A stretch of DNA of 64,000 nt, from contig NW_026929981.1 of assembly GCF_032062105.1 (NCBI RefSeq), positions 124,001 to 188,000 of the forward strand, written 5' to 3'. This DNA comes from Saccostrea cucullata (taxonomy: Eukaryota). Position 1 is the stretch's first letter; each line of letters starts with the position of its first letter. The notes beneath the pieces were generated by a model. That model made no database searches. It was not told the origin of the DNA and saw only the letters and a program-made list of their open reading frames with translations. Both the position numbers and the translations under genes were made by a program. This document shows, piece after piece, positions 7,014 to 47,643 of this stretch.

Positions 7014-10000
7014 TTAATCAGCACCAGCTGCCGTAGGCTCAATTTCCTCCGAACATGACCCAGGAACACACCGGTGGGTAGTGACGTCATACATTGTTCC
7101 CGCTTTACATTTGTCCGCCACGTATTGTCCATAGATACAGACTGCGTATTGGTCACAGCTATTTTGACATTTTTGAACAGTTCCAACAAAACAGAAACCG
7201 CATTCTCCAGGCACAATGCAGCCTTCACCTATATCACAAGCTGTAAATGAGAAAAAGAGAAAAAGTTACCTTAGACATTTATTAAGATAAACACTTACAT
7301 TGTGAGTTAAGTTTCAGGAAATGTAGTTCTAACTTGCAAGAACATAAGTTAAACAAAACGGGGTGTCAAGAATAGATACTGAAAGATACAATTATATAAA
7401 TTAATGGGCTATCAAATTAAAAATGAATAAATAATGTAAACTAAGTAAGATGAATATTTCTATAACCTATCTTGCACAATCTCAGACTCATTTTTTCCAA
7501 ACAAAAAAAAAACTATTTTTATTGTCAAAATTTAAGTGATTGATTAATACATTGTATATGTATATACATGTATTCGAGATGAATACAACATACCGTTTGA
7601 TAGACGAATTTACTTACTTGCGTCAGCTGAAGGTTGTTGTGTATTCATGGCTCTTGGAATCAACAGAATAGGTATAGGTGGTGGGGTGGGCATATTGACA
7701 GGAACCACACCAGGCATAGGCCAGTCTTCCTCATAATCGCAATAGAAGGTCATGTACACCTGCCTACTGTCCTTTGTTGGACAACTATTACCAAGACTCC
7801 AGGTTTTGTATACAGCCTCTCCATAGTCATTTGCGTACAGCTTTGGGTACGATGAGGTGACGCGCAACATACCAGAACAGGGTTGCGATTCGCCCGTTTG
7901 GGATGTAGGGATTTTACAATATGGACGACAAATTCTACCACAGGAATCGTAAGCAGAAAGCATTACATCTGTGGCTCCATAGCCTGGGTTCTTAATTGCA
8001 ACGAATGCTGTTGAACTAGAAATGGCTAATCGGTGATCGACAATTGCATATTCTTTGTACGTTCCAACATAGTTAATACCATTGGACTGAATAAATACTG
8101 CACCAGCTCCAAACTGGCCAGTGTTACAAGATGCGTAAGAAGCTGGTCGACCAGTATTGAGGGGTGTTCTCAAAGTAGCATATGCCTCTGGTTCATAAAT
8201 GTCTGTCCTTGTTAATGGCCGCCCACCAATAACAGGAAAAGCGTTGTATCTTTCGTAATCTGGGGGACGCTTGTACACTACATCTACTGGAAGGTAGACC
8301 CACTGCCTCATGTCACTAATACCGTTTATATTGAAGGTATTTTGATAAGGTCGGTTAACAGGAATTACTGGACAGGTTTCTTGAGAAGAGGTAACTGGAG
8401 AAGGAGATGGTGGTAGCATGGAATTTTGAATTCTATTCTGGCTCATTCCATGTATCATTCTGTTGATATCTGTTCCTGTACCACGTATTCTAGGAATGTT
8501 TGTATTCATATGCTGGAAAGTTGTATGCTGTGGCTGAGACGGCATCTGAAAGACTTCAAATCCCATTGGCTTGGCTCTGTCTCTTCGAACAGACATAAGA
8601 ACGTTGCGACCCAGATGAGAAATCACTGCTGGATGTGCATTTGGCATTGTGTTAGGCCCAACTCTATGTATGTTGATATTCATATTTGGAACTCTCAATC
8701 TACTTAACTCCACTAACCTCTGTTGGAAAACCCTTTGCTGTTGTTGCTGTTGCATTTGCATATTATTAGCAAACATTGCATGATGTTGTAGAGGAGGCAT
8801 ATGGGCTTGATCAACGGATACACATATCCACTCATTTTGTTGGTTAATACACTGAAGGTATGAAGAACCACAGTTACGATTAAATGCTGAGCATGATGGA
8901 GAATCTTCATATCTGTATATTCCGTTCACGATGTATTCACTAAAACTGTCAATGTTTCTAAAGGTACCAAGTCCCAACATGGAGGTCGGTAAATGCAAAG
9001 TATGGTTAACTACAGAAGGGTAGTCACGGGTTGGGTCGATGCCGTTTCTTCTCTGCTGTGCCCTAAATTTCTCCCAAATGTAATCGATATAAGCGTGATG
9101 GAGGAAGAACACAGGATCCATGGCTGCAGTGGTAAGTTCTCCCATTTGTCCGTCTACCCACATATGTACCTCGCCATGATGAAATTCAAGGTTGAACGGA
9201 GTGTAGGCATGAGGTTCGGTAATCTCACCGATTCTTTTTCGCGTCAGAATATTTTGAATTACTCGTCTGTTGAATAACTGTCCTGTGTTAGCCAAGTTTC
9301 GAATTAAAGGGCCTACAGGAGTTGACCAATCAGCAAATGGACCAGTGTTTACGAGTCCATTTCCATTTCCAAGGAAACGTGAACTCCAAATAACTGATGC
9401 AACAGGATTTGCCATTGGCTCATCAAGAGTTGAATCCCAGTATGGTAGCGTCACATCCGGGATCTTTTCTCGCATAGCGTTCTCAAACCTTTGTATAATC
9501 AATAGAAATACTATCTAAGAATCTTAATAGAAATACAATATAAGAATCGTAAGAAAAAGAATTTATTTAACAATAAATGGTTTTTTTTTTTGTATCTTAA
9601 GAATTAACTGTTCCAACTATTGCAGAAAACTGCATTATAAAAGTAACTGAGGTATGCAGTTTTTTCTGCAATTGTTGCAGATACATCGACGTATGTTTCG
9701 ATGATTATATCGCCTTCACTTCGAGAAATCGTTTCATAAAGGTGGGTATTACAACTGATATAAGTAAGCGGTAAGGGATTAAGGGAAGTGTTTTTGAAAT
9801 AATGAATTAAATATTAAGTGGATGTTAATATATTTGAGTTAAAGATAACACAGGAAAAATACTTTACATAATTAAGAAAACTCTGTGCCATCCCAGAAAG
9901 TTGGGTCCTCCATGGGCAGCTGTTTCCGTAATACCCTGATGTAAAGCAGCCAGCGCGTCATATTTATTTGGATAGATGCTCTATAAAAATATTGTAATTT

Positions 10001-11032
10001 GATTTAAATGTATCACATGATCTAAAATATTTTTATCCATCAAAATTGTTGATAATTAAAGGGAAATGCATAAAATAATCTTTTTTCTCTAATAAAAGAA
10101 AGTGATCTCTTCGATAAATTTACACCCCGACAGATTTTCTGATTGTTGAAATTATTTCATATTACTTTGCGGTAGAGAAGGCCACTGGCGCCCCTCAAAA
10201 CACAGACGTTTTTAAGGTAATTATATTGAGTAATTCTTCTTTTTATAAAAAGAAATCAAGATCGTTTAAAATTCAAACCTCTGACTGAAGTTTGAATTGT
10301 GATTCATAATTTCAATCTGACAAAATGGTACAAAAAGAGACAAGTTTCCTTTCAAATTATTGACTTTTTCCAAAGATGCTTCAATTTGTATACTGGAATG
10401 GTCAATATGATAACAAACCTTATCTTCTTTCAACATCTGTATTGCCTTCAGAAATTTTTGTCGCTCCATGTCCGATAACATTCGAATTTCTGTCCTTATT
10501 TTTGCCGCTCTTGAATTCGTTAATGTTCTCCGGTTTGGAAACACCAGCAGACGGCTATACCACATATTTGTGTTAGACGTGACGTTGTAATTTAGCCATT
10601 TATGCATTCCATTTTGCTGCCACATATACTGGTGAACACAGATCCAGTTGATAGATTGTCCAACAGTATGTCGGATGCTGGTCTTTTGTGCATATCTAGT
10701 AAAGCAATCGTCAAGTCCTTGTGGAATTGCCATATTATGAATCATTCCACGGGCTACGGAAACCAAAGCGAGAATTGTAGATAACAGAAGTTGTAACTAA
10801 AAATTCAAAGAAAATGACAAATTAAAGAACCTTAATCAAACAACACGAACTTAAAATCCAGAATAACTTTATAAAACATCACAAACTTAAAACAAAAAAT
10901 ATCATCTTTAAGCTTATTTCTGTGTCATTGAGGCTCTGCAACTGTAGCTTTTTTGTTTCAAGAAATGAAATGAAATGAAAGTTTTGGGGGTTGAAACATA
11001 GACCTTTCATTTGTTACCTTCCATTTCTTCAT
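7014..11032 (-). CDS. Secreted tyrosinase-like type-3 copper protein (Tyr-A, ~867 aa) with low-complexity linker, Cys-rich C-terminal domain and terminal chitin-binding type-2-like domain; 5 coding exons
   Basis: Exons (minus): 11032-11018 (MKKWK|GTAAC), 10796-10419, 9980-9868, 9488-7618, 7240-7014 (TAA). All junctions are GT-AG and in frame (phases 0,0,2,1). Signal peptide MKKWKLQLLLSTILALVSVARG. CuA: ALHQG..AAHGGPNFLGWHR; LPYWD motif; CuB: EFHHGEVH..DPVFFLHHAYID. Last exon has CQNSCDQYAVC..DKCKAGTMYD..RCVPGSC. Confidence 0.93.
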
Positions 11033-11112
11033 TTTGTCGCTTAAGGTTTCCATAACTGTCCTCTTACGTTTGGAAAACGCTTATGAGCAGGTTCGAATTT
11101 GATCAGCGCCAC

Positions 11113-11120
11113 CTATATAG
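11113..11120 (-). promoter_or_regulatory. Candidate TATA box of Tyr-A
   Basis: CTATATAG about 80 nt upstream of the predicted ATG (11032) on the minus strand. Confidence 0.5.
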
Positions 11121-12299
11121 TTTTATTGTCAACTGATGTGTCATGGTGGCTTTGAGACGGAAAAGGATCTTCGGTGGAAATCGTTAAAACCATGTCTAAG
11201 GAAACGCATCTATGTTGACACAAGTTTTAAGGCTGTTTTTAAAGTTGGTCATTGTACCTTTACCATGTTTAACAAGATTGCTTCTTCAAAAAACGTTCAT
11301 TATAGCATTTCTTTCTCACCAGAAAGAGGCTTTTCTATACTTACAACACGTTAGGTTCAAAAAGACGAGCGTCAAAAACAAGCATTACAAGATGTTTGGA
11401 GAAGGTTGTCGATATTTTTTTTTAAATATATAAAACAATGAAAGGACTTGAGGTGAAAAACATTAATTAAAAACAAAAGACGTGAATATGTCTACATGTT
11501 ATTGGACATTTTCTTTTCTTTGTTATTCTAAAATTTAATTTGGTGAATAATTTTTATGGGGGAAGATAGCTCTGAAGAAAGTTGTCTGCGAGGCGTTGTT
11601 TAAACAAGACAGGTGTTAAAGGTAGCACAATATAAAGTGAAAGCAAAAAATTCCAAGAAATCCAAGAAGGTGGGCGAATGGCCTCTTACAATTTTCATGG
11701 ATATTCTTTTAATCTGAAAAAGCTTATTAGATAATTTGATTGTTAGGTTCTGAAATAGATGTTTTACATGTGTACTCATAACTTTTATTTTTCATTAAAG
11801 GATTACTTTAAAAAGCATGCCAAGACAATTATCACCATAAAGTATTTTAACAGTGATAGAATTTCAAAATAATGCCAAGAGAACATAAGTACTCCACATT
11901 CTACGTCTAATGACCATGCAACCTTGTCAGGTGATGTAAATGGAAAAAGGGGTGTGTCGCAACCCAAAAAATGCTACACTGGCCTCATTTTGGTACTACT
12001 AATTAGGTTTACAAATTTAGAATCTTTGGTGCATTTACTGTGTGGCTTAAGACCAACACACTGTTCTATTGATGTGTGTCGCTACCATAAATATGGTATT
12101 TTATTTCAGTGTCGTTACACGTGACATTATAGGATGAGTACTTGAACTACGAATATGCCAGAATACATGTAGAGTTATGCATATTACAGATCTCGACGGA
12201 CTTATCTTGTCCACTGCGGGTATGATATAACGTTATTAACTGAAATGTATGTTGTGCACGTAAAGAGTTCTGAATACAAGAGAAATAAGAAAATAAAAA

Positions 12300-12800
12300 T
12301 TATGGATAATGAATAGTATTCAAGATCAAAAGTTCATCCACACAATACAGATTAGGAGCAGAGCAAAGATAGACCTCCAAACATCAGAGAGATAAGGTGC
12401 CATGGAGAACAAAGCATCCCATGCCGACTGATCATACCCGCCGTGTGTCCCTTGTCGTAACAGGGAAAAAAAGGAAAATTCCGTAGACAAATTAATATGT
12501 AATAAATTGCCTTACAATAAGTTGAAAAAATTTCAGTCAGCACTTGACTTAAAATTAATGATAAGCTTATTTATTGACAAGCTCGTTGTACCGACAATAG
12601 AACTTGCAAAATGATGAATTTAGAAGAAACGTTCAGATCCTTGTTTCATCAACTTATTTTTCAATTGTTTGTTTCTTTTTAAAACTTGTTTATACGTAGA
12701 GCATGCTTTTGCGTATTGAATTTATTGAGAGACATAAGTTCTATATGCTGAAAAGACATATTGTTACAAAAGTGAGGTAAGTTGATGACTGAAAAGTTGT
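12300..12800 (-). mobile_element. Decayed Penelope-like fragment between Tyr-A and ApoD-1
   Basis: Same tail and downstream sequence as 3975-4500. Confidence 0.7.
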
Positions 12801-13292
12801 AATCTAGTTACTTCACATTTTGACGGGTACATGTATAAACTTTAAAGACGTCAAAACAACACCGTAGTAAAAGTGCTGAGAAAAGGCACTTATTAAACCT
12901 GTTATTCAATGAATACAGTATAGATAAATGTTCTGTCTAGTTTAGACACAAAATTATCCGTAATTTTTTAATTATTCTCGTTGTATATAAAAATCTTAGA
13001 TAAAATAAAAAATATACATTTCTACGATACATCCGGATTAATACCTTTTCATCACTTTATTAAACCTAAATATTCTGACTGTATACGAGGTTAATGTTCG
13101 AATTCTTGTCCTATCAGAACTTGGTCTTCGATAAGAACACACGTACTTAGGAAGAAACATTTCATGTTTATTATGAAATTAATCTCTCCCTCACTTTGAC
13201 TATCAGTCAAACAAGCAGAGTCCGAAGTTGAACCCTGTCAGGACAACAAATTTCCAAATTCCACGCTTATCTTGATTATAAAAGACCTAATA

Positions 13293-13340
13293 TCACGTGT
13301 GCCATCACCATGTGTGATGTAACTTTCTCAGAGTATATAT
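13293..13340 (+). promoter_or_regulatory. ApoD-1 proximal promoter: E-box CACGTG block plus TATA-like
   Basis: TCACGTGtgccaTCACcatgTGTGAtGT followed by TATATAT; the block aligns with the ApoD-2 promoter. Confidence 0.5.
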
Positions 13341-13396
13341 GTATCTCCGTTTTCGTGTAATTTTATATTGATATTGTATGTTTAACCATCAAAATC

Positions 13397-14629
13397 ATGC
13401 TACCTCTACTTTTTGTATCTCTTTTACTCTTCGGTGTTTCGCAGGCCCAGGTTTTTGGTTTAGGGAAGTGTGCTCAGGTGAAAACACAGGAAACTCTCGA
13501 TTTGAACAAGGTGAGACTAAATGTTTTCGATTCTATTTATTTTTAAATAAAAGTCTATTTGACCAAACTTTCCAAGGATGTCAAGAACTTGTAGTTAAGC
13601 AATTATGTCTTTTCATTCGAATCTTTTTTTCAATGTTTACAACTTTGTTTTATGAATCCTATTTTCGTTTGCAGTACCTGGGAACTTGGTATGAAATATA
13701 TAAATTTAAGGCCAATTTTGAGGGAAATCAGAAATGTGTCTCAGCAAACTATCAACTCAAATCAGACGGGCATATTCGAGTCGATAATATAGGATATGAG
13801 TAAGTTGAAGTTATTTTTTAGATACAGCCATCGTAACTTAATCTCAAAAATTAGTAAGCGAATTTTATTCTGTCACAAAGTGCTTCAGGTGTCGTTTACT
13901 AGAACTAAAGTGTTAAACAATAGACCATTTCAAAAACAGGAACTCTAAATGATTATCAATATTGCTTACTTTATGTAACATTCAAAAGGTGTCGTGATGA
14001 AAACTTCTTACATAAAATAGAACTGTTTCCCTAATCAGAAATGGACAAAAGAAAGAAGCTGTTGGTGATGGATACATTCCAGACCCAAACTATCCATCGA
14101 GACTTGGTGTTAGATTTTCAAATTGTAAGCATTTGTATATAGACAAAGTCTATCAAAGTCCATTTTAATTTTCATTTTGTTTTGTACTTATTTTAAATAA
14201 TTATTTAGATCTTTTACTTCCTCTATTGCATAAAAACATAGATTTTAAGTTTAGAAAATATTTTATGAAAGTAAAAGAGTATGAAAGAAAAATAATTACA
14301 AAATCGCAGTCTGAAATGCATGAAATGAAAATTTCAACGAGACAAGAGATAAAACATTTTCATTATACCTATACATCAGTAAAGTCTTTTATATTTTCTT
14401 TTCAGTGGCTCCATATGGAAGATACTGGGTCCTAGATACTGATTACACAACCCATACAATGATCTACTCCTGCAGCGATATTCTAGGAATTTTCCATATT
14501 TCATATGCCTGGATCTTAAGTCGTGAGAGAACACTGGATGAATCCGTGAAAAACAGACTTTTTGCCAAGGCCGAGTCCTTCGGCATCGACACATCAAAGT
14601 TCTTAAAAGAAGATCAAACTGGATGCTAA
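13397..14629 (+). CDS. ApoD: Apolipoprotein D-like lipocalin 1 (182 aa), 4 coding exons
   Basis: Exons 13397-13510, 13675-13799, 14039-14124, 14406-14629 (114+125+86+224 nt, GT-AG). Signal peptide MLPLLFVSLLLFGVSQA. Lipocalin motifs YLGTWYEI, LDTDY, AWILSR; four Cys in the ApoD pattern; ends DQTGC*. AATAAA at 14687. Confidence 0.93.
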
Positions 14630-20579: not shown

Positions 20580-20628
20580 TCACGTGCATTGTCACGTTTT
20601 GTGAAGTGAGATCGTATTTATATAAATA
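20580..20628 (+). promoter_or_regulatory. ApoD-2 proximal promoter: E-box CACGTG block plus TATA
   Basis: TCACGTGcattgTCACgtttTGTGAaGT followed by TATATAAATA about 75 nt before the ATG. Confidence 0.55.
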
Positions 20629-20698: not shown

Positions 20699-22505
20699 AT
20701 GCTGCTGTTACTGTTTGTATCGGTGATTTTATTTGATATATCTTACGCTCAAGTCTATGGTTTTGGGAGATGTGCTAAGGTGAAAACCCAGGAAACATTT
20801 GATCTTTCTAGGGTGAGTATTATTTTAATTTGCCTTTTTTTTTTAAAGAGCAAGGTTCACCTTTGCCTTTTTTGGCCCTGTGAATTTCTGAAAAACTGAA
20901 ACTGCTTAGTTTTAGTTAACAATGCATTGAATATAACTTAAATCTTTGGTGATTGCGTATCTATCAAAAATGAAATAATTTTCCGGCTAGTCAATGCATT
21001 GTGACGTCACTAAATGCGTCAATTTCCTCATATTCGGAAAAGTCTACAAATACAGCCAATTCCTAAAGCTATTTTTCGGTATTTGATATAGAGCGCAATC
21101 TCTGATCTTAAATATGCAACTAGTAAATGATAGAACTGATTCTAAGGATTAAAAGAAATGTTTTATTTTTTAGATCAGAGAGTGTGCTCATATTATTATG
21201 AAAATTAATATAAACTAATAAAATTTCTTTCTTCACTGAAAGTACTCAAATATACCTGTTTACCTTAAAATTCAAGAACATTGCAATTTCATAAAGTCAG
21301 TTCTCTAAGACCTGGACTTTTAGGAGAAAATTTTTAATAGGAGGTGAAACCACTAAGTCTATTTTATTTTAATGCTTGAAATGAAACATCAAGTGGTAAT
21401 CAACCAGTTGGTATATCTACAGGGCCATTTTATGCATAATATGAACCGAGCTCTTTTTCAAAATTGATGACAAAGGCTGATAAAATAAAGGTCTTTTGCA
21501 GAGATATGTATTAAGCATAATTTTTTTGTCTTTTTCTTATGGAACATTATTTTTTTATTTGTAGTATCTTGGAAATTGGTATGAAATATATAAATTCAAA
21601 GCAAACTTTGAGGGAAATGCCAAATGTATATCGGCAAATTACCAGCTAAAATCCAATGGACATATCAGAGTCTATAATTCAGGAATTGAGTGAGTTTCTG
21701 TTCTTTCAGTATTCTTGCTATACTAAGAAAATTATAGACACGAATTCAAGGAAAATCATATACAATGTACAGAAATGTATTTTTGGTAAAATATTTGTGA
21801 AATATACATTCTTGGCTTTAAAATAATACAAATTGAAACAGAATATTCAAAACAACAAAATATTCATGCTTCTCGTTCAGAAATGGAAAAATCAGAGACG
21901 CCATTGGGGATGCGTACATACCTGACCAAACATATCCAGCAAGACTAGGCGTTAAATTCTCCAGCTGTAAGTTGCTGTTGAAGGATATTTAGAAATAATT
22001 TTTAAAGCTTAAATACAGATCAAAAAATAAATATTGTTTACCAAGTTATATTGCAGTCCTTGCACTTAAAAATTTATTGGATGGATATTTGTAGATATTT
22101 GCAGATTTCATTGATACTCGGAATACTTTTTGTCTTTCTTAAAGAAATCTTATCTAACATATAAATGAAAAATTGCGAGAAAAAAAAATAAGCGTCATCA
22201 TTTAAAATATAAGTATATAAACAAATAATCTGGCACTTGAAAGTTTAAGTTTCATGCATGTGATTTTTACAGGGGCTCCATACGGAAGATACTGGATCCT
22301 AGACACTGACTATACAACCCATACATTGATTTATTCCTGCACGGACATTTTGGGGATCTTCCACTTCACATATGCCTGGATCTTGGGTCGTGAAAGGACA
22401 ATGGATCAGGCCGTAGTAGACCGACTCTTCAACAAAGCTGCTTCATTTGGCATCGATACCTCAAATTTCTTAAAACAGGATCAAACTGGGTGCACAACGT
22501 CTTAA
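20699..22505 (+). CDS. ApoD: Apolipoprotein D-like lipocalin 2 (185 aa), 4 coding exons
   Basis: Exons 20699-20812, 21565-21689, 21881-21966, 22273-22505; exons 1-3 match copy 1 in size and all intron phases match. Motifs YLGNWYEI, LDTDY, AWILGR, DQTGCTTS*. Confidence 0.93.
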
Positions 22506-26588: not shown

Positions 26589-26741
26589 TACAGTCTGATT
26601 AAAATCAAACCTTCACTAGCTCCTTCTTATTTTGTTTGTCGCGTGACGCACGCGACAAACAAAATAAAAAGGAGCTAGTGAACGTTTGAGACAAACAAAA
26701 TAAAAAGGAGCTAGTGAAGGTTTGGTTTTAATCAGACTGTA
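26589..26741. mobile_element. Palindromic MITE with internal 36-bp duplication
   Basis: TACAGTCTGATTAAAA.CAAACCTTCACTAGCTCCTT...GTCGCG folds back on itself. GTGAA flanks both ends (26584, 26742). The right arm has GACAAACAAAATAAAAAGGAGCTAGTGAA twice (26654, 26690). Confidence 0.75.
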
Positions 26742-28862: not shown

Positions 28863-31800
28863 AGGTGCATAGACACAGATTTGAAGTTAATATTTTCTTA
28901 AATTTTCTGCATAATGTCATGACTTATATATTGCAATAGCATTTCACACGAAAATATATAAAAAATCTTTTTTCATCTAAAAGTTATTGAAACTTCAAAT
29001 TTTTTGACGGGTTTGATTGACACATCCTTGCACTTTCACAAACTTTACGTTTATTCTTAATACTTAGGAAAAGTGGCAATGTTGTTGTGTATTACTAACA
29101 AATATTAAAACTATAATCCAGAAAATTCAGAGTAGAACTGTTCTAAAGCAAAACATACACACAGTATATTGTCAGTCCGTGTTGTTTTGGTGAGCAGACT
29201 TTAACAATAGAACACACCCGGTAAATCGTAAACCTTAAGAATAACAGAGCCCGTGCCCTGTTTACAAAAACTATGTGTGTTTCACGGGTGTGTTCAATTT
29301 GCGAAACTCTGTACACAACACTAAGCGCGGAATGACGATACTTGTAAAAGTGTTTTGCTTTCGAACATTTCTACTCCGAATATAATACCGCATATTTGAG
29401 TTCATCTCACAATATGCGCCGTTATCAAAGCTCTATCCTTTTATTGTATGTCATCATTCAATTCCTTTTGTGGCAAAAAAACTAATAAATGTGATAAGCC
29501 GGAATTTATTTATCCATCCATACAGTGTCGGTACTTAGTCACTAGGTTTACGGGTTATCTCCCCTTTTCTATGCATCAATGAAAGTGAAAGGTGGGTGAT
29601 GAAAGTATCCGATTTATGTTTTTGTATTATGAAATATTTTATAATAATTTCCAGTTTTTAAAGTTAAGTTTCAGTCAAAGAAGTAAAACAGATTATCTTA
29701 TTAACATTGATATTGCTCGATGGCAAGTATTTTATTGGATTGAAACAGATCGAGTTGCCACCCGTCCATCCGTTTAAACACTGGCACATGGTACAAGAGA
29801 TTACAATGTGGTAATAATAACCAACTTCATCAGCAGATGTTGAATGAATAAAAACTAACTTAGTGAAATAATATATAGACAAAATGAGCTAATGTAAAAA
29901 TAGGTATGAACTTCAACTTTATTCGGTCCATGTTATTCAAGGTCATTTGCCAATAAACATCCGTACACATGGTGGCCTATATTTAGTTACTTAGATTCCT
30001 TAGCCTATCTTTAGGGGATTTAAAAATGGGAATATCCATAATTATAATTCTTACAGTATGAGTATGCTTTTGTAACTTTGGGTTTGGTGCATTTATCAGT
30101 TTATTTAAAATATTGAGTGATTTTAAAAAAAAAAAATAAATAAATGTTCAAGGATAGGGTTACCCTAGCTGTACCATACCAGTCTACCTTTTGTCCTAAA
30201 AACAGGGAATAAATTAAAAAAAAAAATACAGATTGAGAAGTAATAAAAGTTTGACAAATCTTTAGAAATGTTATTTAGCTAGATTCACAAAGGGACAGAA
30301 CTCTAATTAAAGTATATAAATTTCAATCAAGGCCATTCAACTTTAACAAGGGTCCAAAGAGAGGCATGAAAGGTATGCAATGGTGACAAAGGCAGTAATC
30401 AATTGTGAAATAAAATAGTTTGAAGTAAAATACATAACAAGTTTTGGTGCTTTTGAATGTAACATTATAATATTGCATTTTATGATATGAATGAAACATC
30501 AAGTAAGATGTGTATTTGTTTATACATATTAACAGTTGTACACATGCTATATGACAAAACTCAAGGTAAGTAAATATGAATGATGACTAAAAAGGTAAAT
30601 AGATTTTGAGTAAAAAAAAAAATTCAGTTGGATGGAAGCATTACAATCAACAATTCAGGCTGTAAAATCTGGGAGGCATACCCGGTATAGGTAACATGCA
30701 CCAGAGTTGAATTGTACATTGTCTGTCAAATCCACATAATAATAATAATACATTAGGACCAGCAGCATCCTCACCTATTCGATATCACTTCTCTTAAGGG
30801 GCTTGACAGGGAGGACAACTTCAGATTCAACAAGAACAATAACAATGTGGGCATAGTAATTTAGGACCTCAATGGTTCATTAGTAACAGTTGATATAAAT
30901 AGGATTCCCCAAATTTTATTTTAATTAACTACATGTAATATCTAGCTAGGCTAGCTACTATTTTGCTGGTTAATATATATCAAAGGGTTCAGATTAAGTA
31001 AGATGGGGCGAAGGGCATGTTTCGCATTATATATTCTGTGTTGTCATTTTGGTCAATGGTGTAGTTAAAATTATACATAAAGGAAATAAAGGAAGGCCAT
31101 GCTGTTCGTTCCTTGGAAGCCGTCTCCAGTGTACATGAGCATAATCATGAATTTCTCTAACAGCACCTCTACCTTAATTGTGAAGGTTTGATTATAACCC
31201 AATATAAACACATACATTTAAAGGGGCTGGGTGGTTGTGGCCATTTTTAGGCTATTTTGATCTTCTTTAGAAGAAGAGCTCAATAAAGATATAACTGATC
31301 AAATTTTAAAACTAAAATTTATGAAATTTTTCTTTGCCAAATGTTAGTTGACAGCTTAAGATATCATATCCCAAAATTTAAATTATATCTGGTGGTTAAT
31401 AATTGTTGACCCCCTAGCCTCCTTGATGTCTTCTCACCCCTTAACTGCATAAAGGCCTTGTATCCTAGAAAGTTGTGTTTAGTAAATGAAAAGTTTTGTA
31501 CCATCTTAAGTTAACATGAAAAATCAGGTAAACTTATTTTACTAATTTATTATATATAGATTATTTCACAAATGTTGATTATTTACACAGAGATTAATTT
31601 CAGCATGGGCTTTTATTTCCGGACAATGTTCTAAAAACATGGGTCTAGTCACTTGTTTAATATTTATACAAGAAGAGAACTTTGGGTATTGAAATACAAT
31701 TCTACAAATAAAAGACTATAAAAAGAAGTTAAATAATAATAATTTATAGGCTAATTGAAGCACTGTGAAATAAATAAATTTTCAAGAGTATTTAATTAAT

Positions 31801-34800
31801 TAAATTAATTATTAAGAGAAATTAACATAATTAACATTTATTCCTTTGAGTTATCTTTCTCATTGGGGAAAGTGAACTTTAAAATAGGAATTGCAACTTT
31901 TATTTCCTGAACTTTTACCAATTTTCCTCGATATTCATTTTGGCATTGGGAATGAGGGACAATTTACAGAGTTCTTCAGGTGCTACAGTCAAAGCATATG
32001 CAGGTTCATTTGAACACAGCTCACAGTGGTGAATGGTCATGATAAATAAATCGATAAATAAATAAAATAGAAAGGGTAATAATGAGACTTGTAAGGTATA
32101 AATTGGGGCTTTTTGTCAGTGTTGGTTTCTGCTGTGTCTCTAAGTTGTTAAGATTTGCTATTTCACACAGATAAAAGTTGCTTTAGTTAAAATTCTATAT
32201 TCACAGTTTTTAAACTTGCAAAGGGTAAATTGTTTAGGTAACTAGTTTTCTTTATCACTAATAAACACTAAAGGCGAGATTACCTAACTACCTAACAGCG
32301 GGGGGGGTTAGACACATATTTTTCCACAGGCTAGGTTACAATTCAAACCATTTCCTACAATATTTTCTTTTTAATAGCATGTGCTTACTGTTGGAAATTA
32401 AGACACATATGCATGTCTCGGGGCATTTTCCCATTGAAAATATCAGTTCAAACCCAGGTGCATTTGCATGTAATATGATAGGTGTTTATCTCTCATCTGA
32501 GCAGTTACATATAGCATAATTATTTTATGTTACTTTACACATTTATCTCTATGGGATTAAAATGCATAAATCGGTGCATATATATATGTACATGCAGTTA
32601 ACATCCATGCATATAGCTAGTGGGTACAAATACAGGTTAGCTAGGGGATACAAATACAAATCCACATGTGTGTAGGAGTTACAAGATTCATAGTACTAAG
32701 ATTAGATAAACTTCTCCCGCATTTTAGGGTATTAGATGTAGGATAGGTTTCCACTGACTTAGCACATTAATTTTTATGCTCTTTATCATATATCCATTTT
32801 CTACAGCCTTAAAAAGATTATGAAGTCTATTATTTAAATAACCTATTCCATAGCATATTTTTGCGGGGGTGGGGGGGGGGGGCTTAAGGTGTAAAAAGAT
32901 CATGCATTTTTGATAGAGCATCAGCTGGGAAGGGGTTTAGAATAAAGGATTTAGTCAAATGTGCCTTCAATGTCTGCTGCAGTCCAACTACATTTACAAA
33001 TGAGCAGTAAATACAAAGTCCTCTATTGTGTGTCTTGGTTTGAAAGGTACTTATTATATACAAGATTTAATCAATTTTAAATGGTCGTTTGAAGAATTCG
33101 TTTTCATGATAAGTGGTACATGTATAACATCATTGACATTCCCTCAGAACTGGCAAGATACTTTACCAAATATCACAAAACATGTTCTGCAGTTTACATA
33201 TTGGGCATGTGAACACCTTTAAAATTTTTGTCAACAATACAGGAATAGCATAATCATGCTGAAAGGGATAGGGGAAGGGGGGGGGGGGGGGTTAAAGAGT
33301 AAAGGTGCTCATTCATCTTGTTTCTAATCTCTGCATGAAAGTATTTTATCACCTAAAAAATAAATAAATAAGAAATAAAATTCAAATTTATAAACAAATA
33401 AATAAAAAGGGGGGAAGGGGAATCTAAATAAAACGTTTTTCCTACATAATTTTCTTACATTAGTCTAGGTAGTAGTTCTCTCTTGCCAGCTGGATATTAA
33501 TAATGGAATCTGAGACCCAAAGCAATATACTAGTAACTTGGAAAGATATAAATTCAGGAGGGGGGGGGGGGTTAGGCCCAATTAATTTGAAGGGAGACCA
33601 GAATTATTTTAATGCAGGATAGTTCTACAGTGGGTTGGCAATGAGAGAGAGAGTGATGTTCATGATGGATGGGTTGCTGAGGGTTTTGAGTAGGCTAGGA
33701 GTCCATGGTGGGTGGTTAAATTGAAGTTGCCTACCCCCACCAGGTGGCGGTGGGCACCTACGGTGCCCATGTGGCGAAATCGTCACCTTCAATTTAACCA
33801 TTGAACTGTTGATTTTGTTGACTTTTTGTGGTTGATGTTGATATATGTGATGGTTGATGTTGATATATGTAATGTTGACTTTGAAAATTATATCTTATAC
33901 AATGCAAAGCTAAAGCAAAATAATATAATTAAAAGATAATTTGTGTTGAAATGTGTCCGTAGCACGATTGAGGTCAACCCAGCGTGCTACTTTTCCCGTC
34001 AGGGAGGGCACAACTTATGTTGATGTTGGGGGTATGCCATTTTGCCGGCTGCCCCACTGTTATGTAGACCACTGTGGACAATACCTGCCAACTCGAATAA
34101 AACATTAAACTTAAATACGTAGCATTTGTTTATTATATATATATAGGTCTTTGATAATACCGCATATTTGAGTTCATCTCACAATATGCGCCGTTATCAA
34201 AGCTCTATCCTTTTATTGTATGTCATCATTCAATTCCTTTTGTGGCAAAAAAACTAATAAATGTGATAAGCCGGAATTTATTTATCCATCCATACAGTGT
34301 CGGTACTTAGTCACTAGGTTTACGGGTTATCTCCCCTTTTCTATGCATCAATGAAAGTGAAAGGTGGGTGATGAAAGTATCCGATTTATGTTTTTGTATT
34401 ATGAAATACCCTCCCACCTCAACCCTTGAGCTAGGTGTTAAGTATATACCCTTTCTCCTTTTGTTTGTTTAAATAACGTTTTTCATTGTTTTACATGGTT
34501 TGGCTATACCAAATTTATTAGAGTTATGCAAATGTTATTTAGAATCTTTTTCTGCTGTGGGTTTTTGTTTTTGTCTTTTCAGATATTAGAGATTTCGTTG
34601 AAGGAGACTAACGATGCTGATCAGAATTCCTGCTGTTTCCGTTTTCTGGGACCTTTGGAATGATCTCTGGCCGAATACCATGCATGACAAGGGTCAACTG
34701 GGCGAATTATCCATTCGAGGAGTTCGGGGAAAGACAGTAAACTTTACTTCACAGTGGTCGTTTTGTCGAAATCGTCACCTTCAATTTAACCATTGAACTG

Positions 34801-35401
34801 TTGATTTTGTTGACTTTTTGTGGTTGATGTTGATATATGTGATGGTTGATGTTGATATATGTGATGTTGACTTTGAAAATTATATCTTATACAATGCAAA
34901 GCTAAAGCAAAATAATATAATTAAAAGATAATTTGTGTTGAAATGTGTCCGTAGCACGATTGAGGTCAACCCAGCGTGCTACTTTTCCCGTCAGGGAGGG
35001 CACAACTTATGTTGATGTTGGGGGTATGCCATTTTGCCGGCTGCCCCACTGTTATGTAGACCACTGTGGACAATACCTGCCAACTCGAATAAAACATTAA
35101 ACTTAAATACGTAGCATTTGTTTATTATATATATAGGTCTTTGATAAATATTTTTCTGGATTAAAGTTTTAATATTTTTCACTAATACGCAACAAGATTG
35201 CCACTTTTTTAAGTATTAAAAATAAAATTAAAATTTGTGAAGGTGCTAGGATGTGTCGATCAAACCCATCCAAAAAATTGAAGTTTCAATAACTTTTAGA
35301 TGAAATAATATTTTTGATTTATTTTCGTGTAAATGATTTTACAATGTATAAGTCGGGTATTATACAGAAAACATTAACTTCAAATATGTGTCTATGCAGC
35401 T
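28863..35401. mobile_element. Kolobok-like long-TIR MITE (~770 bp when rejoined), interrupted by the split-repeat element
   Basis: Left arm 28863-~29155 (AGGTGCATAGACACAGATTTGAAG...) is the reverse complement of 29350-29381 plus 35150-35401 (...CTTCAAATATGTGTCTATGCAGCT). Flanks are CTAA / TTAA (TTAA-type TSD) and the termini are AG..CT. Confidence 0.7.
29382..35147. mobile_element. Non-autonomous element with split direct repeats (A1-internal-B1A2-spacer-B2), TOC1/PAT/Ngaro-like architecture; alternatively tandem Helitron2-like units
   Basis: A1 29382-29636 = A2 34154-34408 (255 bp, identical by eye). B1 33775-34157 matches B2 34767-35147 (~380 bp; one substitution and a TA-unit indel seen). 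ATAA is shared at all three junctions. No credible ORF inside. Confidence 0.75.
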
Positions 35402-38400: not shown

Positions 38401-38418
38401 ATATTTCTTGACCGAATT

Positions 38419-38484
38419 GGTCACATGTCGAAATCTTATCTAAAGCAGTTATGTAAGAATAATCCACGTGTTTCTCTCTATAAA
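38419..38484 (+). promoter_or_regulatory. ApoD-3 proximal promoter: CACATG, CACGTG and TATA
   Basis: GGTCACATGT (38419), CACGTG (38465), TATAAAG (~38478); ATG at 38542. Confidence 0.5.
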
Positions 38485-38541
38485 GGAATATGTCATGTTT
38501 TCAAGTCTTTGATATTATTATTGTCCTTCCAAAGCATTACA

Positions 38542-39608
38542 ATGCTTCTGCACGTTGCTACTTTTAGCTGCTTTTTAGCTGCAGTCAGAACGCAGGTTTT
38601 TAGTCTTGGTAAATGTCCCACAGTTAAAACTCAAGAATCCTTCGACATAAATAAGGTAGGAATCAAATTTGTTATCTTAAAAAGTTTGAAAAATAAAATA
38701 AACACTTCATGTATAAATGGAAAGAGAGAAACATAAACCATAATTATTATTGGCAGTTATTTAATATATTACATGAAATATTTTCAAAACACAATATTGC
38801 ATTAGAGATACTTCCACAATTTCTGCTGTCTAGCGTACTTATAAGATAATCTCTCATATTTATAGTCTTTAACTAATTAATTCTTTCCAGTATTTGGGAG
38901 ACTGGTATGAAATATACAAATTCGAAGCAAGTTTTGAAGGAAAACAAAGATGCATACGTGCTAATTATCAGGCTAAACCGGATGGTCATATTAGAGTGCA
39001 GAACACTGGAATAGAGTCGGTACCATTGCTAATATTTTTTAAGAGTATCAAAATGATATAAATTGAAATTTTATTATTTAACCTTAACCAGCAATAAGTA
39101 AAAGGCTAGCAATATGTTGTACGTCATCTTTCCAGAGATGGTAAGACCATCACAGCTGTAGGAGATGGATTTGCACCTGATAAAGATTTTCCAGCAAAGC
39201 TTCAAGTTAAATTTTCAGAAAGTAAGTTAATTAATATCTAAAAAATAAAACGTTAGCAATGTCTTCACATTTTTTTTCTGTTTAACGTTTGGTTTGTGTT
39301 ATAGAGTATATGAATATCCTAATATATTCTGTTCATTTCTGAAAAGCTACATTGGCTAAGATTTTTCAATACTATTTTCAGAGGCTCCATATGGTAAATA
39401 CTGGGTGTTAGACACTGACTACGACAACTATACGTTGATCTATTCATGCACAGACCTAGCCGGGGTCAGCCATATAGAGTTTGCATGGATCCTAAGTCGC
39501 AAACGGACATTAGATGAACAATACAAAACAAAGCTATACGACCTCGCCACATCCTTCGGTATCAAGACATCGAACTTTCAAACAGAAGATCAGACTGGGT
39601 GTTCTTAA
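38542..39608 (+). CDS. ApoD: Apolipoprotein D-like lipocalin 3 (183 aa), 4 coding exons
   Basis: Exons 38542-38655, 38891-39015, 39136-39221, 39382-39608; exon sizes 114/125/86 conserved. Motifs YLGDWYEI, LDTDYDNY, FAWILSR, DQTGCS*. TATAAA at ~38478. Confidence 0.93.
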
Positions 39609-41560: not shown

Positions 41561-41599
41561 TTTTTTTTCTAGATTCGTTTGTTTCTCTTAATAAGGTCT

Positions 41600-42125
41600 A
41601 CTTGGACCAGATGCCATAGAGAAGTAAGCATCTCCTATTGATCGGTCGTTTTCGTCATGTGTCGCTTGTCTTCGAAATGTTAATTTAAAACCAGATTGTT
41701 GTTGATATTCTTGAGACATCCATAGTCCGGCTCCTTCTAGATACTGTAATGTCCTAATTTCAAATTAAATGGGATTATCAAATCAATGCTGAAATGAAAT
41801 AGAGTAATGTTGATAGAAGAAATGCCGTCGATAAAGCTAAAGGAAGAAACTTTTTAACGTTGATGTTTTTAAATAAATTTTAGGCTTCATATGAATACAG
41901 GTCAGAGCCACAATTAGTACTCATGAGAATTCCAAAAGATTTACCGAAGACAGGTTCTCCAAAAACTACAGAAAAATTACCAAAGAGAAAATCAAGTTTT
42001 TTTTTAATATCAACCTCGGAATACTGTGTGAAAAACGATAATGTATTTAAAGCATTTTTAACAGAGTAAGTTGACAGATGACTGACACTGCATAACAAGA
42101 CATGCACATTCACACGCTTTATCAT
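41600..42125 (-). mobile_element. Decayed Penelope-like fragments (opposite orientation)
   Basis: ORF 41880-42137 YSEVDIKKKLDFLFGNFSVVFGEPVFGKSFGILMSTNCGSDLYSYEA is a degenerate RT GIPMGTNC motif; tail relic ~41600-41670. Confidence 0.6.
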
Positions 42126-42169
42126 TTTATTGAACAATTGTCTATGATGTTAAATAGACGACCTGGTCT

Positions 42170-44218: not shown

Positions 44219-47200
44219 TCAACCAAACAGCCCATTATTTCTTTGTGTAAACCTCGTCCACCAAGGTACTTGTTGCACAGGCCCTGATGCAACTCCATTA
44301 TTTGGCCTGTTGCTCATAATTAAAGGTAAACAAGTCCTTGTTGACCAGTTACATCTTATGTACGGTGAACCACAGTGATTTGTACCCGGAACGCATTCGG
44401 GTCTCCTCTGACATCTATATATTCTCCGTGTAAATATATCATTAATTCCATCAACCACTAGAAGTCTCCCAAGACCCATGGAAACAAGAGGTTGATGACC
44501 TTGATCGCCTACTATTCTTGGATAGTCTCGGCCAGGATTTATTCCGTTTTGCCTTTGTCTTTGTCGAAATTCTTCCCATAAACAATCAACGAAAGCGTGG
44601 TGAGCAAAAAATGCCGGGTCATACGATGAAGATTCTATGCGACTCATTTGCTCTCCAATCCATACGTGAACATGATTGTGTAATAGTTCTAAGTTATAGC
44701 GATCCTCAGCACTTGGATTGGAAATTTCCCACATCCATCGGCGGCTTAATACATTGTCCACATCAGTTTTCGTCATTAACCTACGGTCAGCTCCGATGTC
44801 ACGGCGGAGGGGTCCATACGGAGTGGAAAATCGCCGGAAGGGACCTGTTACCACAGCTCCATTTCCGTTTCCTAAAAAAAGCGGGGACCACATGATAGAT
44901 CTTCGTGGATCTGGAAGCTCAGCGTCCAGTGTGTTATCCCAGTATGGAACTGTTACGTTTGGTACCTTTTCACGAAGGGCGTTTTCGAACCTAAAAGGAG
45001 ATTTATGTTTATAAAAGTTTTCTGACAGATTTATTTATAATAATCTCTTTTAGTCACCTAAAACAGCAAAATTATGGTACAAGACAATTTTATGACACAT
45101 TACTCGCCTACATGGGCCAATAGTATATATATTTTTTGAAAGTCGTTATATAAGATAGGACTCATTTTCTAACATCACAATACCATTATAATCATAGGAC
45201 ATGATAAGTGCGTTCATTGAACAGTTCTCTTTGCTGTCTTTGTCCAAGTTGAGGCAAGCAATGTTATGAATCGGTAAAGTAAATGACTGAGTGATAAATG
45301 TCCGCCTCATACATGTATAACGACACCTTTAATCTTGGACAGTGAGATATTGGTGGATAACCAAGTAAATTACGTGTAAAGTACATGTTCACCCCCTCCC
45401 TCTTAAAAAATTACGATATATGATTTTTTCCATAAGCATCCTTTATTACTATTATTGTAAACCTAGTCACCAAAGATCCATCATTTATGAGAGAATCATA
45501 CAAAAGTGTTCTCTTTGGCTAAGATCCTGCCATAAAAGAGCTATAAATGAACCCTGGAAATGACTAGGAATGACGAACCAGTTTTTATCTGATCTATCAA
45601 AAACAAAACATTACGTATCTCGAATGTACAAATCCTGTGTTGGGTCAAAAATAAAGGTCATATTCTGAATGTTTTCATTATTTTATCAGTTCATGTCTCA
45701 AATTTATTCAATTTATTCAATTAATTATTTATAAATACAGGTTTTAACTTATTGTGAAGTAAAATGAAAAAGGGGAGTGTAAATTGAAAATATGGATTCA
45801 TGAAGATATACGTTTCGCTTTAGGATTGATATTTGGTTTTCTGATGTGCCATTTTGTTGACCAATCAAACCAGAACTTACAAAATTCAAATCATGACAGA
45901 GTTTCAATAGAGAAAACAAGAAATCTCAAAAAAACAAAAAAACAGATCTACATGTATTAATTACTATTGTACTTTCAGTTTCAACAATATACACAGTATT
46001 GTTGTCTGTAAATACTTACAGCGTGAGATAAATTCTGTGCCATCCCAAAAATCCCGGACCGCCATGCGCACCGGAAGCTGTGTTCCGATGATGAAGCGAA
46101 GCAATGGCGTCGAATTTATTTGGCAATACAGTCTGTGAAATATAACGAAAGAAAGAAAAACCATTACTTAACTTTATGATAATACAAAGCACCATAAGGC
46201 CAGCATTTTTTTATTTTTAGGTTTACAAACCCGCCGCTCAAGTTTTTGCATTTTCAGAAAAAAAATAAAATTGAGAAAAACAGAATTTTTTCTTTCCGAT
46301 GTCAAATTTGAGTCGGGATCGAGGTTTCAAATTTACGAACTCGTACTTCCGGTTTTAAATTTGTGTCAAGTCCATAGCAGCACCTTGATTTAATGTAAAT
46401 ATTTATCGGTAGGAGTGCCATTCAAAACGTTTCACCCGTTCAGAGAACAATAAAATGCTGACGACTTTGTTGCAAAGTGACATGTTGGTGAGATAATTAT
46501 GTATCCGTATTCAAAAGTAACTGTGTCTGTAATTGTAAATTATTTTCCTCCCACAGGTTTAAAACTGCCCATGGTAGCTATTGTCAGAGACATTGTTTAT
46601 GTTTCTGTCATAGCTTACAGTCTTAGCATCATTCTTCAGAAAAGGGTCGCATAAAGGCGCTCTTCATCATTTATGCATCAGATGTAATGAATAAAACTAT
46701 ATTGGGAGAAGTTAAATCCATTTGAGGAAGAAATAAACAATAGCCTAAAGAAATGAAATATTTCAACTATTTAAAAACAAGAATATACAAATATATACAG
46801 GCATATAGTATCGTTTATGGCGGCCAGAAAAATTATTTTACACTTAATTGAAAAAATTCCACCCTACTCCTCAATAAAACTCCCTGTCTGTTTTATGAAA
46901 GGAATTATTACTTTTATAGGTCTAGAGTAAATTAATATTTTGGATTAATTTCTACCTAACACACACATTAAAAACAAAAATGAAGATATATTAAAAGAGA
47001 TTAAAAAAATTGATTTTTTGTTTTAAAAAATCTGTATTTTGTCCAACATCAAAAGATTTATATCACTGCCCCCAACTGGTAGATGATGAAATAAACAATT
47101 AAAGGTTGTATTTTCCCCTTTGTAACCCTTATGTGTCCAAAGGCAAGAAGCCTGTTAGGAGAGCATAAAAAAGAAGAAAAATTAATGTAAAAAGTCGATA

Positions 47201-47643
47201 ACTTTTCCAAAATTTATATTTTTTTCATTTCCTCCTCCTACGGGACTTTTTCATTCTGATGTTCGTAAACCTAAAAATAAAAAAATGCTGGCCTAATGTT
47301 TTTAATTTTCATATGATAAAGGCGCATTGCATTCATTTAAAGGCCGTTAACAGCATTAAAAATGTTGTGCAAAGTGTGAAAATGAGTGAATGAGGTTCAT
47401 GTGTACCCTGTCGTTTTTAAGAAGTAGAATGGCTTGGTGATAGTTCCTGCGCTCTTCATCTGACAGTAATCTGTACTCTTTGCGCACGCGTAGTTCGTTT
47501 CCCCTTGGAAGGTAGAAGAGGCCATTCATCCATTGCACAAACCGGGAATTGGCGTTAGTCGGTGTCCTGATTTGCAGACGACTTATGGGGAATATCGCCA
47601 TAAAAAGGATGAGCACGTGCAATAGAGACATAAGTGACGGCAT
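44219..47643 (-). CDS. Compact secreted tyrosinase-like type-3 copper protein (Tyr-B, ~373 aa), 3 coding exons
   Basis: Exons (minus): 47643-47407, 46132-46020, 44990-44219 (237+113+772 nt, GT-AG). Signal peptide MPSLMSLLHVLILFMAIFPISRL; RVRKEYRLLS. CuA: SLHH..GAHGGPGFLGWHR; VPYWD; CuB: ELLHNHVH..DPAFFAHHAFVD. A TTTCAG acceptor 3 nt before the ATG implies an upstream non-coding exon. Confidence 0.93.
46198..47293. mobile_element. PIF/Harbinger-like non-autonomous DNA transposon in a Tyr-B intron
   Basis: Perfect ~29-bp TIR GGCCAGCATTTTTTTATTTTTAGGTTTAC; TAA duplicated on both sides (46195-46197, 47294-47296). Confidence 0.8.

What the first reader, a model, noticed from the sequence alone, without database searches (positions are those of the whole stretch)
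7014..47643. Tyrosinase-lipocalin sandwich: candidate shell/pigment gene cluster (<-TyrA | ApoD x3-> | <-TyrB)
Seen: the only genes in ~41 kb are two secreted type-3 copper oxidases in the same orientation, flanking three secreted ApoD-like lipocalins on the opposite strand. Tyr-A and ApoD-1 are head-to-head (start codons 2.36 kb apart). Known: molluscan tyrosinases act in periostracum tanning, shell matrix and melanin; invertebrate ApoD-like lipocalins (crustacyanin, insecticyanin/bilin-binding proteins) carry pigments and hydrophobic ligands. Inference: this may be a co-regulated module in which the oxidases make quinones or pigments and the lipocalins deliver, capture or buffer substrates or chromophores at the mantle edge. 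I know of no description of such a linked enzyme-carrier cluster, but I cannot search to confirm that.
Basis: partly seen in the sequence, partly recalled or inferred. Interest (0 to 1): 0.8.

Follow-up and report, generated by a model that had tools for sequence, protein, structure and literature searches.

The report
Lipocalin triplet inside oyster tyrosinase array
Three real lipid-carrier (ApoD-like) genes sit between two members of an old row of at least four shell-enzyme (tyrosinase) genes in oysters; the layout is kept across oyster genera, but the evidence so far points to neighbours that are regulated separately rather than a joint pigment module.

Summary
The five genes are real and placed as described. 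The window is from the oyster Saccostrea cucullata; my TyrA, TyrB, ApoD1 and ApoD2 models match RefSeq proteins. The 'sandwich' is a framing effect: two more same-strand tyrosinases lie just left of the window, so TyrA and TyrB are members 3 and 4 of a tandem array already published for the Pacific oyster (mapped by gene order and primers). TyrA-TyrB tandem order also holds in Pinctada, so it is older than oysters. Each oyster adjacency (TyrA-ApoD1, ApoD3-TyrB) recurs in other genera (Magallana, Ostrea, Crassostrea). It is absent in Mytilus and not seen within 10 kb of either gene in Pinctada, where 43 kb stay unseen. Co-regulation is not supported: one raw RNA run has spliced TyrA and no ApoD1, another assembly has ApoD1 and no TyrA; the two genes have separate TATA boxes with a high-copy repeat between; ApoD promoters carry an E-box shared with unlinked mussel and pearl-oyster ApoDs; a published shell/mantle list holds both tyrosinases and no ApoD. 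Best reading: nested tandem duplicates kept by ordinary microsynteny. I found no paper on the nesting, and no earlier scan finding of it.

The parts
7014..11032 (-). TyrA: tyrosinase-like type-3 copper protein, 867-874 aa; exons 11032-11018, 10796-10419, 9980-9868, 9488-7618, 7240-7014; six copper-ligand His positions present; Gln/Met/Asn-rich linker, Cys-rich C-terminal region shared with the array members TyrC and TyrD, terminal chitin-binding CBM14
   Evidence: introns 2 and 3 seen in RNA; ortholog clade across bivalves SH-aLRT 97
11007..11396 (-). Conserved non-coding block = TyrA first exon edge, 5' UTR and proximal promoter (TATA-like box about 11119); 74-81% identical in M. gigas and O. 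edulis; no CACGTG/CATGTG
12300..12730 (.). High-copy interspersed repeat in the middle of the TyrA-ApoD1 spacer
   Evidence: 7,497 first-look candidates genome-wide; 40 scored at 75-77% identity
13290..13345 (+). ApoD1 proximal promoter: E-box CACGTG at 13294, CATGTG about 13309, TATA-like box about 13334
   Evidence: E-box also in M. gigas, O. edulis, Pinctada and one Mytilus ApoD
13397..14629 (+). ApoD1, 182 aa lipocalin; exons 13397-13510, 13675-13799, 14039-14124, 14406-14629
   Evidence: (identical to XP_062621008.1); all three introns seen in RNA contigs
20699..22505 (+). ApoD2, 185 aa, 74% identical to ApoD1; exons 20699-20812, 21565-21689, 21881-21966, 22273-22505; E-box at 20581; orthologs found only in Saccostrea
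29382..35147 (.). Young repeat element with near-identical internal duplications (255 nt at 29382/34154; 300 nt at 33772/34764) in the ApoD2-ApoD3 gap; no gene
   Evidence: noted separately as s1-725341
38542..39608 (+). ApoD3, 183 aa, 56-60% identical to ApoD1/2; exons 38542-38655, 38891-39015, 39136-39221, 39382-39608; upstream TCACATG at 38421 (kept in C. virginica) and CACGTG at 38465
   Evidence: (88% identity of last exon to the C. virginica gene next to TyrB)
44219..47643 (-). TyrB: 373 aa tyrosinase-like protein, ortholog of Pinctada maxima tyrosinase A2; exons 47643-47407, 46132-46020, 44990-44219; the ATG follows a splice acceptor, so the 5' end lies further right
   Evidence: clade SH-aLRT 100
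47862..57218 (.). At least nine collinear conserved non-coding blocks upstream of TyrB (70-84% identity, up to 476 bp), outside the sandwich; likely TyrB enhancers and untranslated exons (inference)

Best explanation
Two independent tandem-duplication histories overlap. An old row of secreted mantle/shell tyrosinases (TyrD, TyrC, TyrA, TyrB, all on one strand) existed before oysters. An ApoD-like lipocalin gene came to lie in the TyrA-TyrB gap on the opposite strand, at the latest in the common ancestor of Saccostrea, Ostrea, Magallana and Crassostrea, and duplicated locally (ApoD3 versus ApoD1 early; ApoD2 seen only in Saccostrea). The tyrosinases most likely oxidise tyrosine/catechols to quinones that tan or cross-link periostracum and shell matrix, TyrA being tethered to chitin by its CBM14 (inferred from family knowledge and published oyster data). 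The ApoDs most likely act as general secreted carriers of small hydrophobic ligands under their own E-box plus TATA promoters (inferred). The arrangement persists because gene order is slow to change among oysters, not because the proteins work as a unit. Shown: genes, array, synteny pattern, separate promoters, TyrA/ApoD1 decoupling in four runs. Inferred: timing of nesting, biochemical roles, absence of shared control for ApoD2/3 and TyrB.
For: Four same-strand tyrosinases on contig C12118, only 42-47% identical in the catalytic region. TyrA and TyrB orthologs in the same order and strand 63 kb apart in Pinctada with no lipocalin within 10 kb of either; locus tags five apart in Sinanodonta and both on a 208-kb contig in Ylistrum. 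Mytilus: TyrA and TyrB orthologs 6.8 Mb apart, ApoDs 28-35 Mb away, closest relative of ApoD1-3 on a different chromosome in three assemblies. Unrelated neighbours are kept at least as well: ApoD4 next to an ABC1/ADCK kinase from Pinctada to Saccostrea and a DEAH helicase next to TyrB in M. gigas (fused gene model). RNA: X17 raw reads TyrA present with two splice joints, ApoD1 depth 0; X20 ApoD1 depth 80, no TyrA; X1 ApoD1 607 versus TyrA 7-11; X19 neither. Separate TATA boxes, conserved block only at TyrA, repeat between, spacer 2.4-6 kb variable. E-box in 8 of 10 ApoD promoters including unlinked Pinctada and Mytilus genes, none within 600 bp of TyrA in three oysters. CGI_10011913 and CGI_10011916 are in the 76-protein shell-and-mantle list, ids 14/15 and any apolipoprotein are not (PMC5379566).
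Against: Both adjacencies have survived across four oyster genera and the ApoD3-TyrB distance is 4.6 kb in both S. cucullata and C. virginica. RNA test covers only TyrA and ApoD1, four runs of unknown tissue from a species label that is a relative or divergent population (reads mostly under 95% alike), and contigs drop rare transcripts. The middle 43 kb of the Pinctada gap was not seen and my word search missed ApoD3-type proteins, so nesting could be older. The mapping of CGI and LOC ids to TyrA and TyrB rests on order plus one primer pair. MITF E-boxes can act from 1.6-1.8 kb in a bivalve tyrosinase promoter (PMC8173187), so E-boxes in the spacer could serve both genes.
Confidence: 0.7

Rival explanations
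1. Bystander in a regulatory block: the ApoDs have no biochemical tie to the tyrosinases but are locked in place because enhancers of the tyrosinase array lie among them, or they borrow mantle expression from those enhancers.
For: TyrB has a rich conserved non-coding landscape over at least 10 kb; arrangement kept in four genera; TyrA-TyrB gap is large (33-94 kb) yet order is kept.
Against: In the parts of the gap that could be compared, conserved non-coding DNA is limited to the TyrA promoter and the TyrB 3' end; the rest are repeats. The TyrB blocks lie outside the sandwich. Only parts of the gap were compared.
Confidence: 0.17
2. Functional enzyme-carrier module: oyster-specific ApoD1-3 were recruited to mantle-edge pigment or periostracum cells, switched on with the tyrosinases by a MiT/TFE (MITF-type) factor, and carry chromophores, substrates or reactive lipids/quinones.
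For: Conserved E-box in the nested ApoD promoters (local chance of one CACGTG per 100 bp is 0.017); MITF activates a bivalve tyrosinase promoter through E-boxes (PMC8173187); the second-closest solved structure is the biliverdin-binding fish lipocalin sandercyanin; flanking tyrosinases are probably shell/mantle proteins and CGI_10011916 is up in black muscle scar (PMC5600958); nesting and expansion appear confined to oysters.
Against: TyrA and ApoD1 decoupled in RNA; the E-box is ancestral, found in unlinked ApoDs, and missing from the conserved TyrA promoter; no ApoD in the shell/mantle list; no ApoD mention in the text or held supplements of two oyster colour transcriptome papers (files partly cut); the proteins are far closer to ApoD (104 bits) than to crustacyanin or insecticyanin (51-57 bits); no ligand known.
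Confidence: 0.13

Closest known systems
Crassostrea (Magallana) gigas four-tyrosinase cluster on scaffold43702 (CGI_10011911/12/13/16; LOC105320006/07/08/11, Tyr-11 to Tyr-14)
   Same: Four tyrosinases on one strand with two other gene ids between the third and fourth (PMC5379566, PMC5600958 Table S6, PMC9656583 Table S2). Tyr-12 primers encode peptides found in TyrC of this contig, which places TyrA as the third member (CgTyr2, mantle edge) and TyrB as the fourth by order.
   Different: Those papers do not identify the intervening genes or discuss lipocalins. The id mapping for TyrA and TyrB is by order only; the listed length of CGI_10011916 (1,824 nt) and its primers did not match TyrB directly.
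Pinctada maxima tyrosinase A2 / bivalve 'tyr-1-like' ortholog group
   Same: TyrB last exon 78% identical; 93% to M. gigas; 60-73% in mussels, scallops, clams and freshwater mussels; one well-supported clade.
   Different: No lipocalin within 10 kb in Pinctada, Mytilus, Argopecten, Dreissena or O. edulis; present in C. virginica.
Apolipoprotein D / Lazarillo-type lipocalins (human ApoD 2HZQ; fish sandercyanin)
   Same: Best solved-structure match E 8e-29; four conserved cysteines, GxWY motif, TDY motif, four coding exons as in chordate ApoD.
   Different: No methionine at the position of the antioxidant Met93; ApoD1/2 lack N-glycosylation sequons; locally triplicated; ligand unknown.
Crustacyanin, insecticyanin and bilin-binding protein (pigment lipocalins)
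   Same: Same lipocalin superfamily, secreted, disulfide-bonded.
   Different: About half the bit score of ApoD (33-57 versus 104); no evidence of pigment binding or of expression in pigmented tissue.
Tandem shell-matrix gene arrays of bivalves (PMC4759782)
   Same: Tandem duplication of shell genes, tyrosinases included, is reported as common.
   Different: Here an unrelated duplicated family is nested in the array.

Membership tests
Type-3 copper tyrosinase, secreted (alpha) molluscan type | Pfam Tyrosinase domain above cut-off | tested here: met
   TyrA 125.7 bits, TyrB 130.3 bits, cut-off 22.6
Type-3 copper tyrosinase, secreted (alpha) molluscan type | Three His at CuA and three His at CuB | tested here: met
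   CuA LH..AH..GWHR and CuB H-x3-H..FFxHHA motifs intact in both proteins
Type-3 copper tyrosinase, secreted (alpha) molluscan type | N-terminal signal peptide, no transmembrane anchor | tested here: inconclusive
   Hydrophobic N-termini and no obvious C-terminal hydrophobic run by inspection; no predictor run
Type-3 copper tyrosinase, secreted (alpha) molluscan type | Monophenolase/diphenolase activity | not testable with these tools
   needs enzyme assay
ApoD-like lipocalin | Lipocalin domain with ApoD as closest characterised relative | tested here: met
   Pfam Lipocalin_2 79-89 bits for ApoD1/2, last exon of ApoD3 51 bits; human ApoD best PDB match
ApoD-like lipocalin | Four cysteines for two disulfides; four coding exons | tested here: met
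   C25, C59, C131, C182 in all three; four exons; criteria from PMC8530192
Chordate ApoD (strict) | Antioxidant Met93 | tested here: not met
   No Met at the aligned position; filed as ApoD-like, not ApoD
Pigment-carrying lipocalins (crustacyanin, insecticyanin/BBP, sandercyanin) | Closest sequence relatives are pigment carriers | tested here: not met
   ApoD 104 bits > sandercyanin 85-90 > insecticyanin 57, crustacyanin 49-55, BBP 33
Pigment-carrying lipocalins (crustacyanin, insecticyanin/BBP, sandercyanin) | Binds a chromophore in vivo | not testable with these tools
   needs ligand pull-down
Functional (co-regulated, non-homologous) gene cluster | Linkage conserved across species | tested here: inconclusive
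   Met within Ostreidae; absent in Mytilus; Pinctada gap partly unseen; unrelated neighbours equally conserved
Functional (co-regulated, non-homologous) gene cluster | Members co-expressed | tested here: not met
   TyrA without ApoD1 (X17 raw reads) and ApoD1 without TyrA (X20 contigs); ApoD2, ApoD3, TyrB not tested
Bidirectional promoter pair (TyrA/ApoD1) | Divergent starts within about 1 kb sharing one promoter | tested here: not met
   TATA-like boxes about 2.2 kb apart, high-copy repeat between, spacer about 6 kb in O. edulis, conservation only at the TyrA end; threshold from general knowledge; true start sites not mapped
Functional (co-regulated, non-homologous) gene cluster | Products act in one pathway | not testable with these tools
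   no ligand or knock-down data found (paper searches)

The most novel reading that the evidence does not exclude
The oyster-restricted ApoD1-3 clade was recruited into mantle-edge pigment/periostracum cells and is held inside the tyrosinase array by shared MITF-type control (E-boxes in the TyrA-ApoD1 spacer, or TyrB's distal enhancers acting on ApoD3), carrying tetrapyrrole or quinone-related ligands into the shell: an animal enzyme-plus-carrier cluster for shell colour.
Probability: 0.13. Interest if true: 0.65.

Novelty: new member of a known kind. Interest (0 to 1): 0.27.

Why it matters
If the best reading holds, this is an ordinary case of two tandem families interleaved and it matters mainly as a caution: any shell-colour QTL or selective signal at the oyster CgTyr2 cluster also spans ApoD-like genes. 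If the module reading were true, it would be a rare physically linked enzyme-carrier pair in an animal and would give a named candidate for the unknown pigment-carrying proteins of oyster shell. The conserved ApoD E-box and the TyrB non-coding blocks give concrete, cheap targets for testing either way.

Tried and rejected
Assembly artefact or pseudogenes: rejected; no N in the window, frames open, introns confirmed by RNA, models equal RefSeq. A two-tyrosinase 'sandwich' as a unit: rejected; array of at least four. Recent inverted or segmental duplication making TyrA/TyrB: rejected; 45% identity, separate bivalve-wide clades. Bidirectional promoter: rejected on spacing, repeat and conservation. 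Pinctada ApoD FSP39_002937 as the ortholog of the nested genes: rejected; it groups with S. cucullata ApoD4 on contig C21702 and both flank an ABC1/ADCK gene. Hidden genes in the 16-kb ApoD2-ApoD3 gap: none found. Conserved blocks upstream of TyrB as coding exons: no codon periodicity, no long frame. Dead ends: accession-number and keyword paper searches gave nothing on oyster ApoD near tyrosinase; a search for TyrA2 names returned unrelated papers; published CGI_10011916 primers matched nothing fetched; the sigma-70 scan is irrelevant to an animal. The ApoD up-regulated by retinoic acid in PMC9656583 (LOC105331368) lies outside the LOC105320006-11 series and could not be assigned to a paralog. 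No structure prediction was run because family assignment was already clear.
Full report
Observation. The window has no N and is contig C12118:124001-188000 of a 1.17-Gb genome. The TyrB model is identical to XP_062621053.1 of Saccostrea cucullata, whose contig length (1,073,782) equals that of C12118. All five genes were rebuilt exon by exon in scripts with canonical splice sites. TyrA (867 aa; RefSeq 874 aa) has a tyrosinase domain and a terminal chitin-binding CBM14; TyrB (373 aa) is a compact tyrosinase. Both keep the six copper-ligand histidine positions. ApoD1-3 (182, 185, 183 aa; 56-74% identical) share four coding exons with phases 0/2/1 and four cysteines. RNA shows two TyrA introns and all three ApoD1 introns. 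No other gene was found in the interval. Spliced models were joined only inside scripts; database searches used single exons by reference or protein ids returned by the tools, and the joined-model search step was left out.

The sandwich is part of a larger array. The genome has about 32 tyrosinase matches, and two more lie on the minus strand of the same contig just left of the window (TyrC at 112.1-114.6 kb, TyrD at 93.7-97.4 kb). The four are 42-47% identical in the catalytic region. TyrA and TyrB each belong to a bivalve-wide ortholog group (SH-aLRT 97 and 100, quick tree); TyrB is the ortholog of Pinctada maxima tyrosinase A2. In Pinctada the TyrA and TyrB orthologs are on the same strand, in the same order, 63 kb apart. 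In Sinanodonta their locus tags are five apart and in Ylistrum both lie on a 208-kb contig. The array is therefore older than oysters. It appears to be the cluster already published for the Pacific oyster: four minus-strand tyrosinases CGI_10011911/12/13/16 on scaffold43702 (PMC5379566, PMC5600958) and LOC105320006/07/08/11 (PMC9656583). Primers for Tyr-12 (LOC105320007) encode HHGAA and GTVKGR, which match TyrC; by order this makes TyrA the third member (CgTyr2, reported high in mantle edge) and TyrB the fourth. That last step is inference.

Synteny of the ApoDs. TyrA head-to-head with an ApoD1 ortholog recurs in Magallana gigas (2.5 kb) and Ostrea edulis (about 6 kb; TyrB 94 kb from TyrA, same orientations), and an ApoD3 ortholog is convergent on TyrB at 4.6 kb in Crassostrea virginica. 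Copy number and content vary: ApoD2 orthologs were found only in Saccostrea, O. edulis and S. echinata have two ApoD1-type proteins, and M. gigas has a RecQ-like helicase model 6.7 kb after ApoD1. Outside oysters I found no case. The Pinctada ApoD I found is 11 Mb away and is the ortholog of a fourth S. cucullata gene (ApoD4, contig C21702); both sit beside an ABC1/ADCK kinase gene. No lipocalin lies within 10 kb of TyrB in Argopecten or Dreissena. Limit: about 43 kb in the middle of the Pinctada gap could not be fetched, and the word search that found Pinctada's ApoD4 ortholog also missed ApoD3-type proteins, so an older origin of the nesting is not excluded. Two controls show that such retention needs no shared function: ApoD4-ADCK has lasted since the split from pearl oysters, and a DEAH helicase next to TyrB here is fused to TyrB in an old M. 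gigas gene model.

Regulation. One read-laying run on 8750-14700 with four runs gave all four states: X17 (raw reads, 1.9 Gb read) has TyrA at depth about 5-13 with splice joints and ApoD1 at zero; X20 (contigs) has full ApoD1 at depth 80 and no TyrA; X1 has ApoD1 at 607 and TyrA at 7-11; X19 has neither. X17 is the firm one, since contigs drop rare transcripts. Tissues are unknown, the reads are mostly 85-95% alike to the window (a relative or divergent population), and ApoD2, ApoD3 and TyrB were not covered. The spacer is not a shared promoter: the only conserved non-coding block (11007-11396) abuts TyrA, each gene has its own TATA-like box, and a high-copy repeat lies between. Eight of ten ApoD promoters examined carry an E-box 60-120 bp before the ATG (CACGTG in seven; local chance 0.017 per 100 bp), including the unlinked Pinctada and one Mytilus gene; the TyrA promoters of three oysters have none within 600 bp. 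The motif is thus an ancestral ApoD feature. It leaves a door open, because MITF drives a bivalve tyrosinase through E-boxes 1.6-1.8 kb upstream (PMC8173187) and the spacer has CACGTG at 12118 (not in a conserved block) and 13294. TyrB's many conserved non-coding blocks lie on its far side, outside the sandwich. In a published list of 76 C. gigas proteins that are both in the shell proteome and mantle-enriched, CGI_10011913 and CGI_10011916 appear, while ids 14/15 and any apolipoprotein do not. PMC5600958 reports that only one member of this cluster rose in black muscle scar and that co-expressed tyrosinases were not in the same cluster.

How it most likely works. Shown: intact secreted-type tyrosinases in an old array, and a locally duplicated ApoD-like family nested between members 3 and 4 in oysters. 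Inferred from family knowledge: the tyrosinases make quinones that tan or cross-link periostracum and shell matrix, TyrA being anchored on chitin; the lipocalins carry small hydrophobic ligands. Their closest solved relative is human ApoD (104 bits), then sandercyanin (about 90), far ahead of insecticyanin and crustacyanin (49-57). They lack the antioxidant Met93 of chordate ApoD, so that specific mechanism does not transfer.

Novelty and verdict. The genes are annotated in RefSeq and the tyrosinase cluster is published. I found no paper that notes the nested ApoDs or their E-box, but the library is incomplete. Earlier scan notes in this genome concern other lipocalin-like barrel genes and a repeat inside the gap, not this arrangement. 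Interest 0.27.

Noticed in passing
window 47862-57218: At least nine collinear, non-coding blocks conserved with O. edulis and C. virginica upstream of TyrB (the largest, 56748-57218, is single-copy); the TyrB ATG directly follows a splice acceptor. An unusually rich regulatory landscape for a shell enzyme gene.
   Followed up: partly
window 13294, 20581, 38421/38465 and orthologous promoters (L028, L029, L030, L037, L026): E-box plus TATA architecture conserved in bivalve ApoD promoters from oysters to Pinctada and Mytilus, suggesting control by a bHLH-ZIP factor (MiT/TFE or USF); lost in S. cucullata ApoD4.
   Followed up: partly
window 29382-35147: Young repeat element with 99-100% identical internal duplications of 255 and 300 nt, flanked by inverted repeats at 28943-29125 and 35152-35333.
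   Followed up: no
window 26589-26741: 153-bp near-perfect palindrome (MITE-like).
   Followed up: no
window 62800-63470 (minus strand): Broken open frames resembling the C-terminal zinc-knuckle region of a non-LTR retrotransposon (resemblance from memory; Pfam gave no significant hit).
   Followed up: no
G000:C12118:198000-248000 (L014-L018): Tandem array of at least three very large, nearly single-exon DEAH-box helicase genes with KH, RRM and IBR domains to the right of the window; adjacent to TyrB also in M. gigas.
   Followed up: partly
G000:C12118:86518-87891 (L009): Single-exon SK-type calcium-activated potassium channel gene just left of the tyrosinase array.
   Followed up: partly
G000:C21702:799233-800342 (L033-L034): Fourth close ApoD paralog (ApoD4) next to an ABC1/ADCK kinase gene, an adjacency shared with Pinctada.
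   Followed up: yes
P0225-P0237: The protein library holds very long proteins made of up to 19 tandem lipocalin domains (1,200-3,500 aa); origin not looked up.
   Followed up: no
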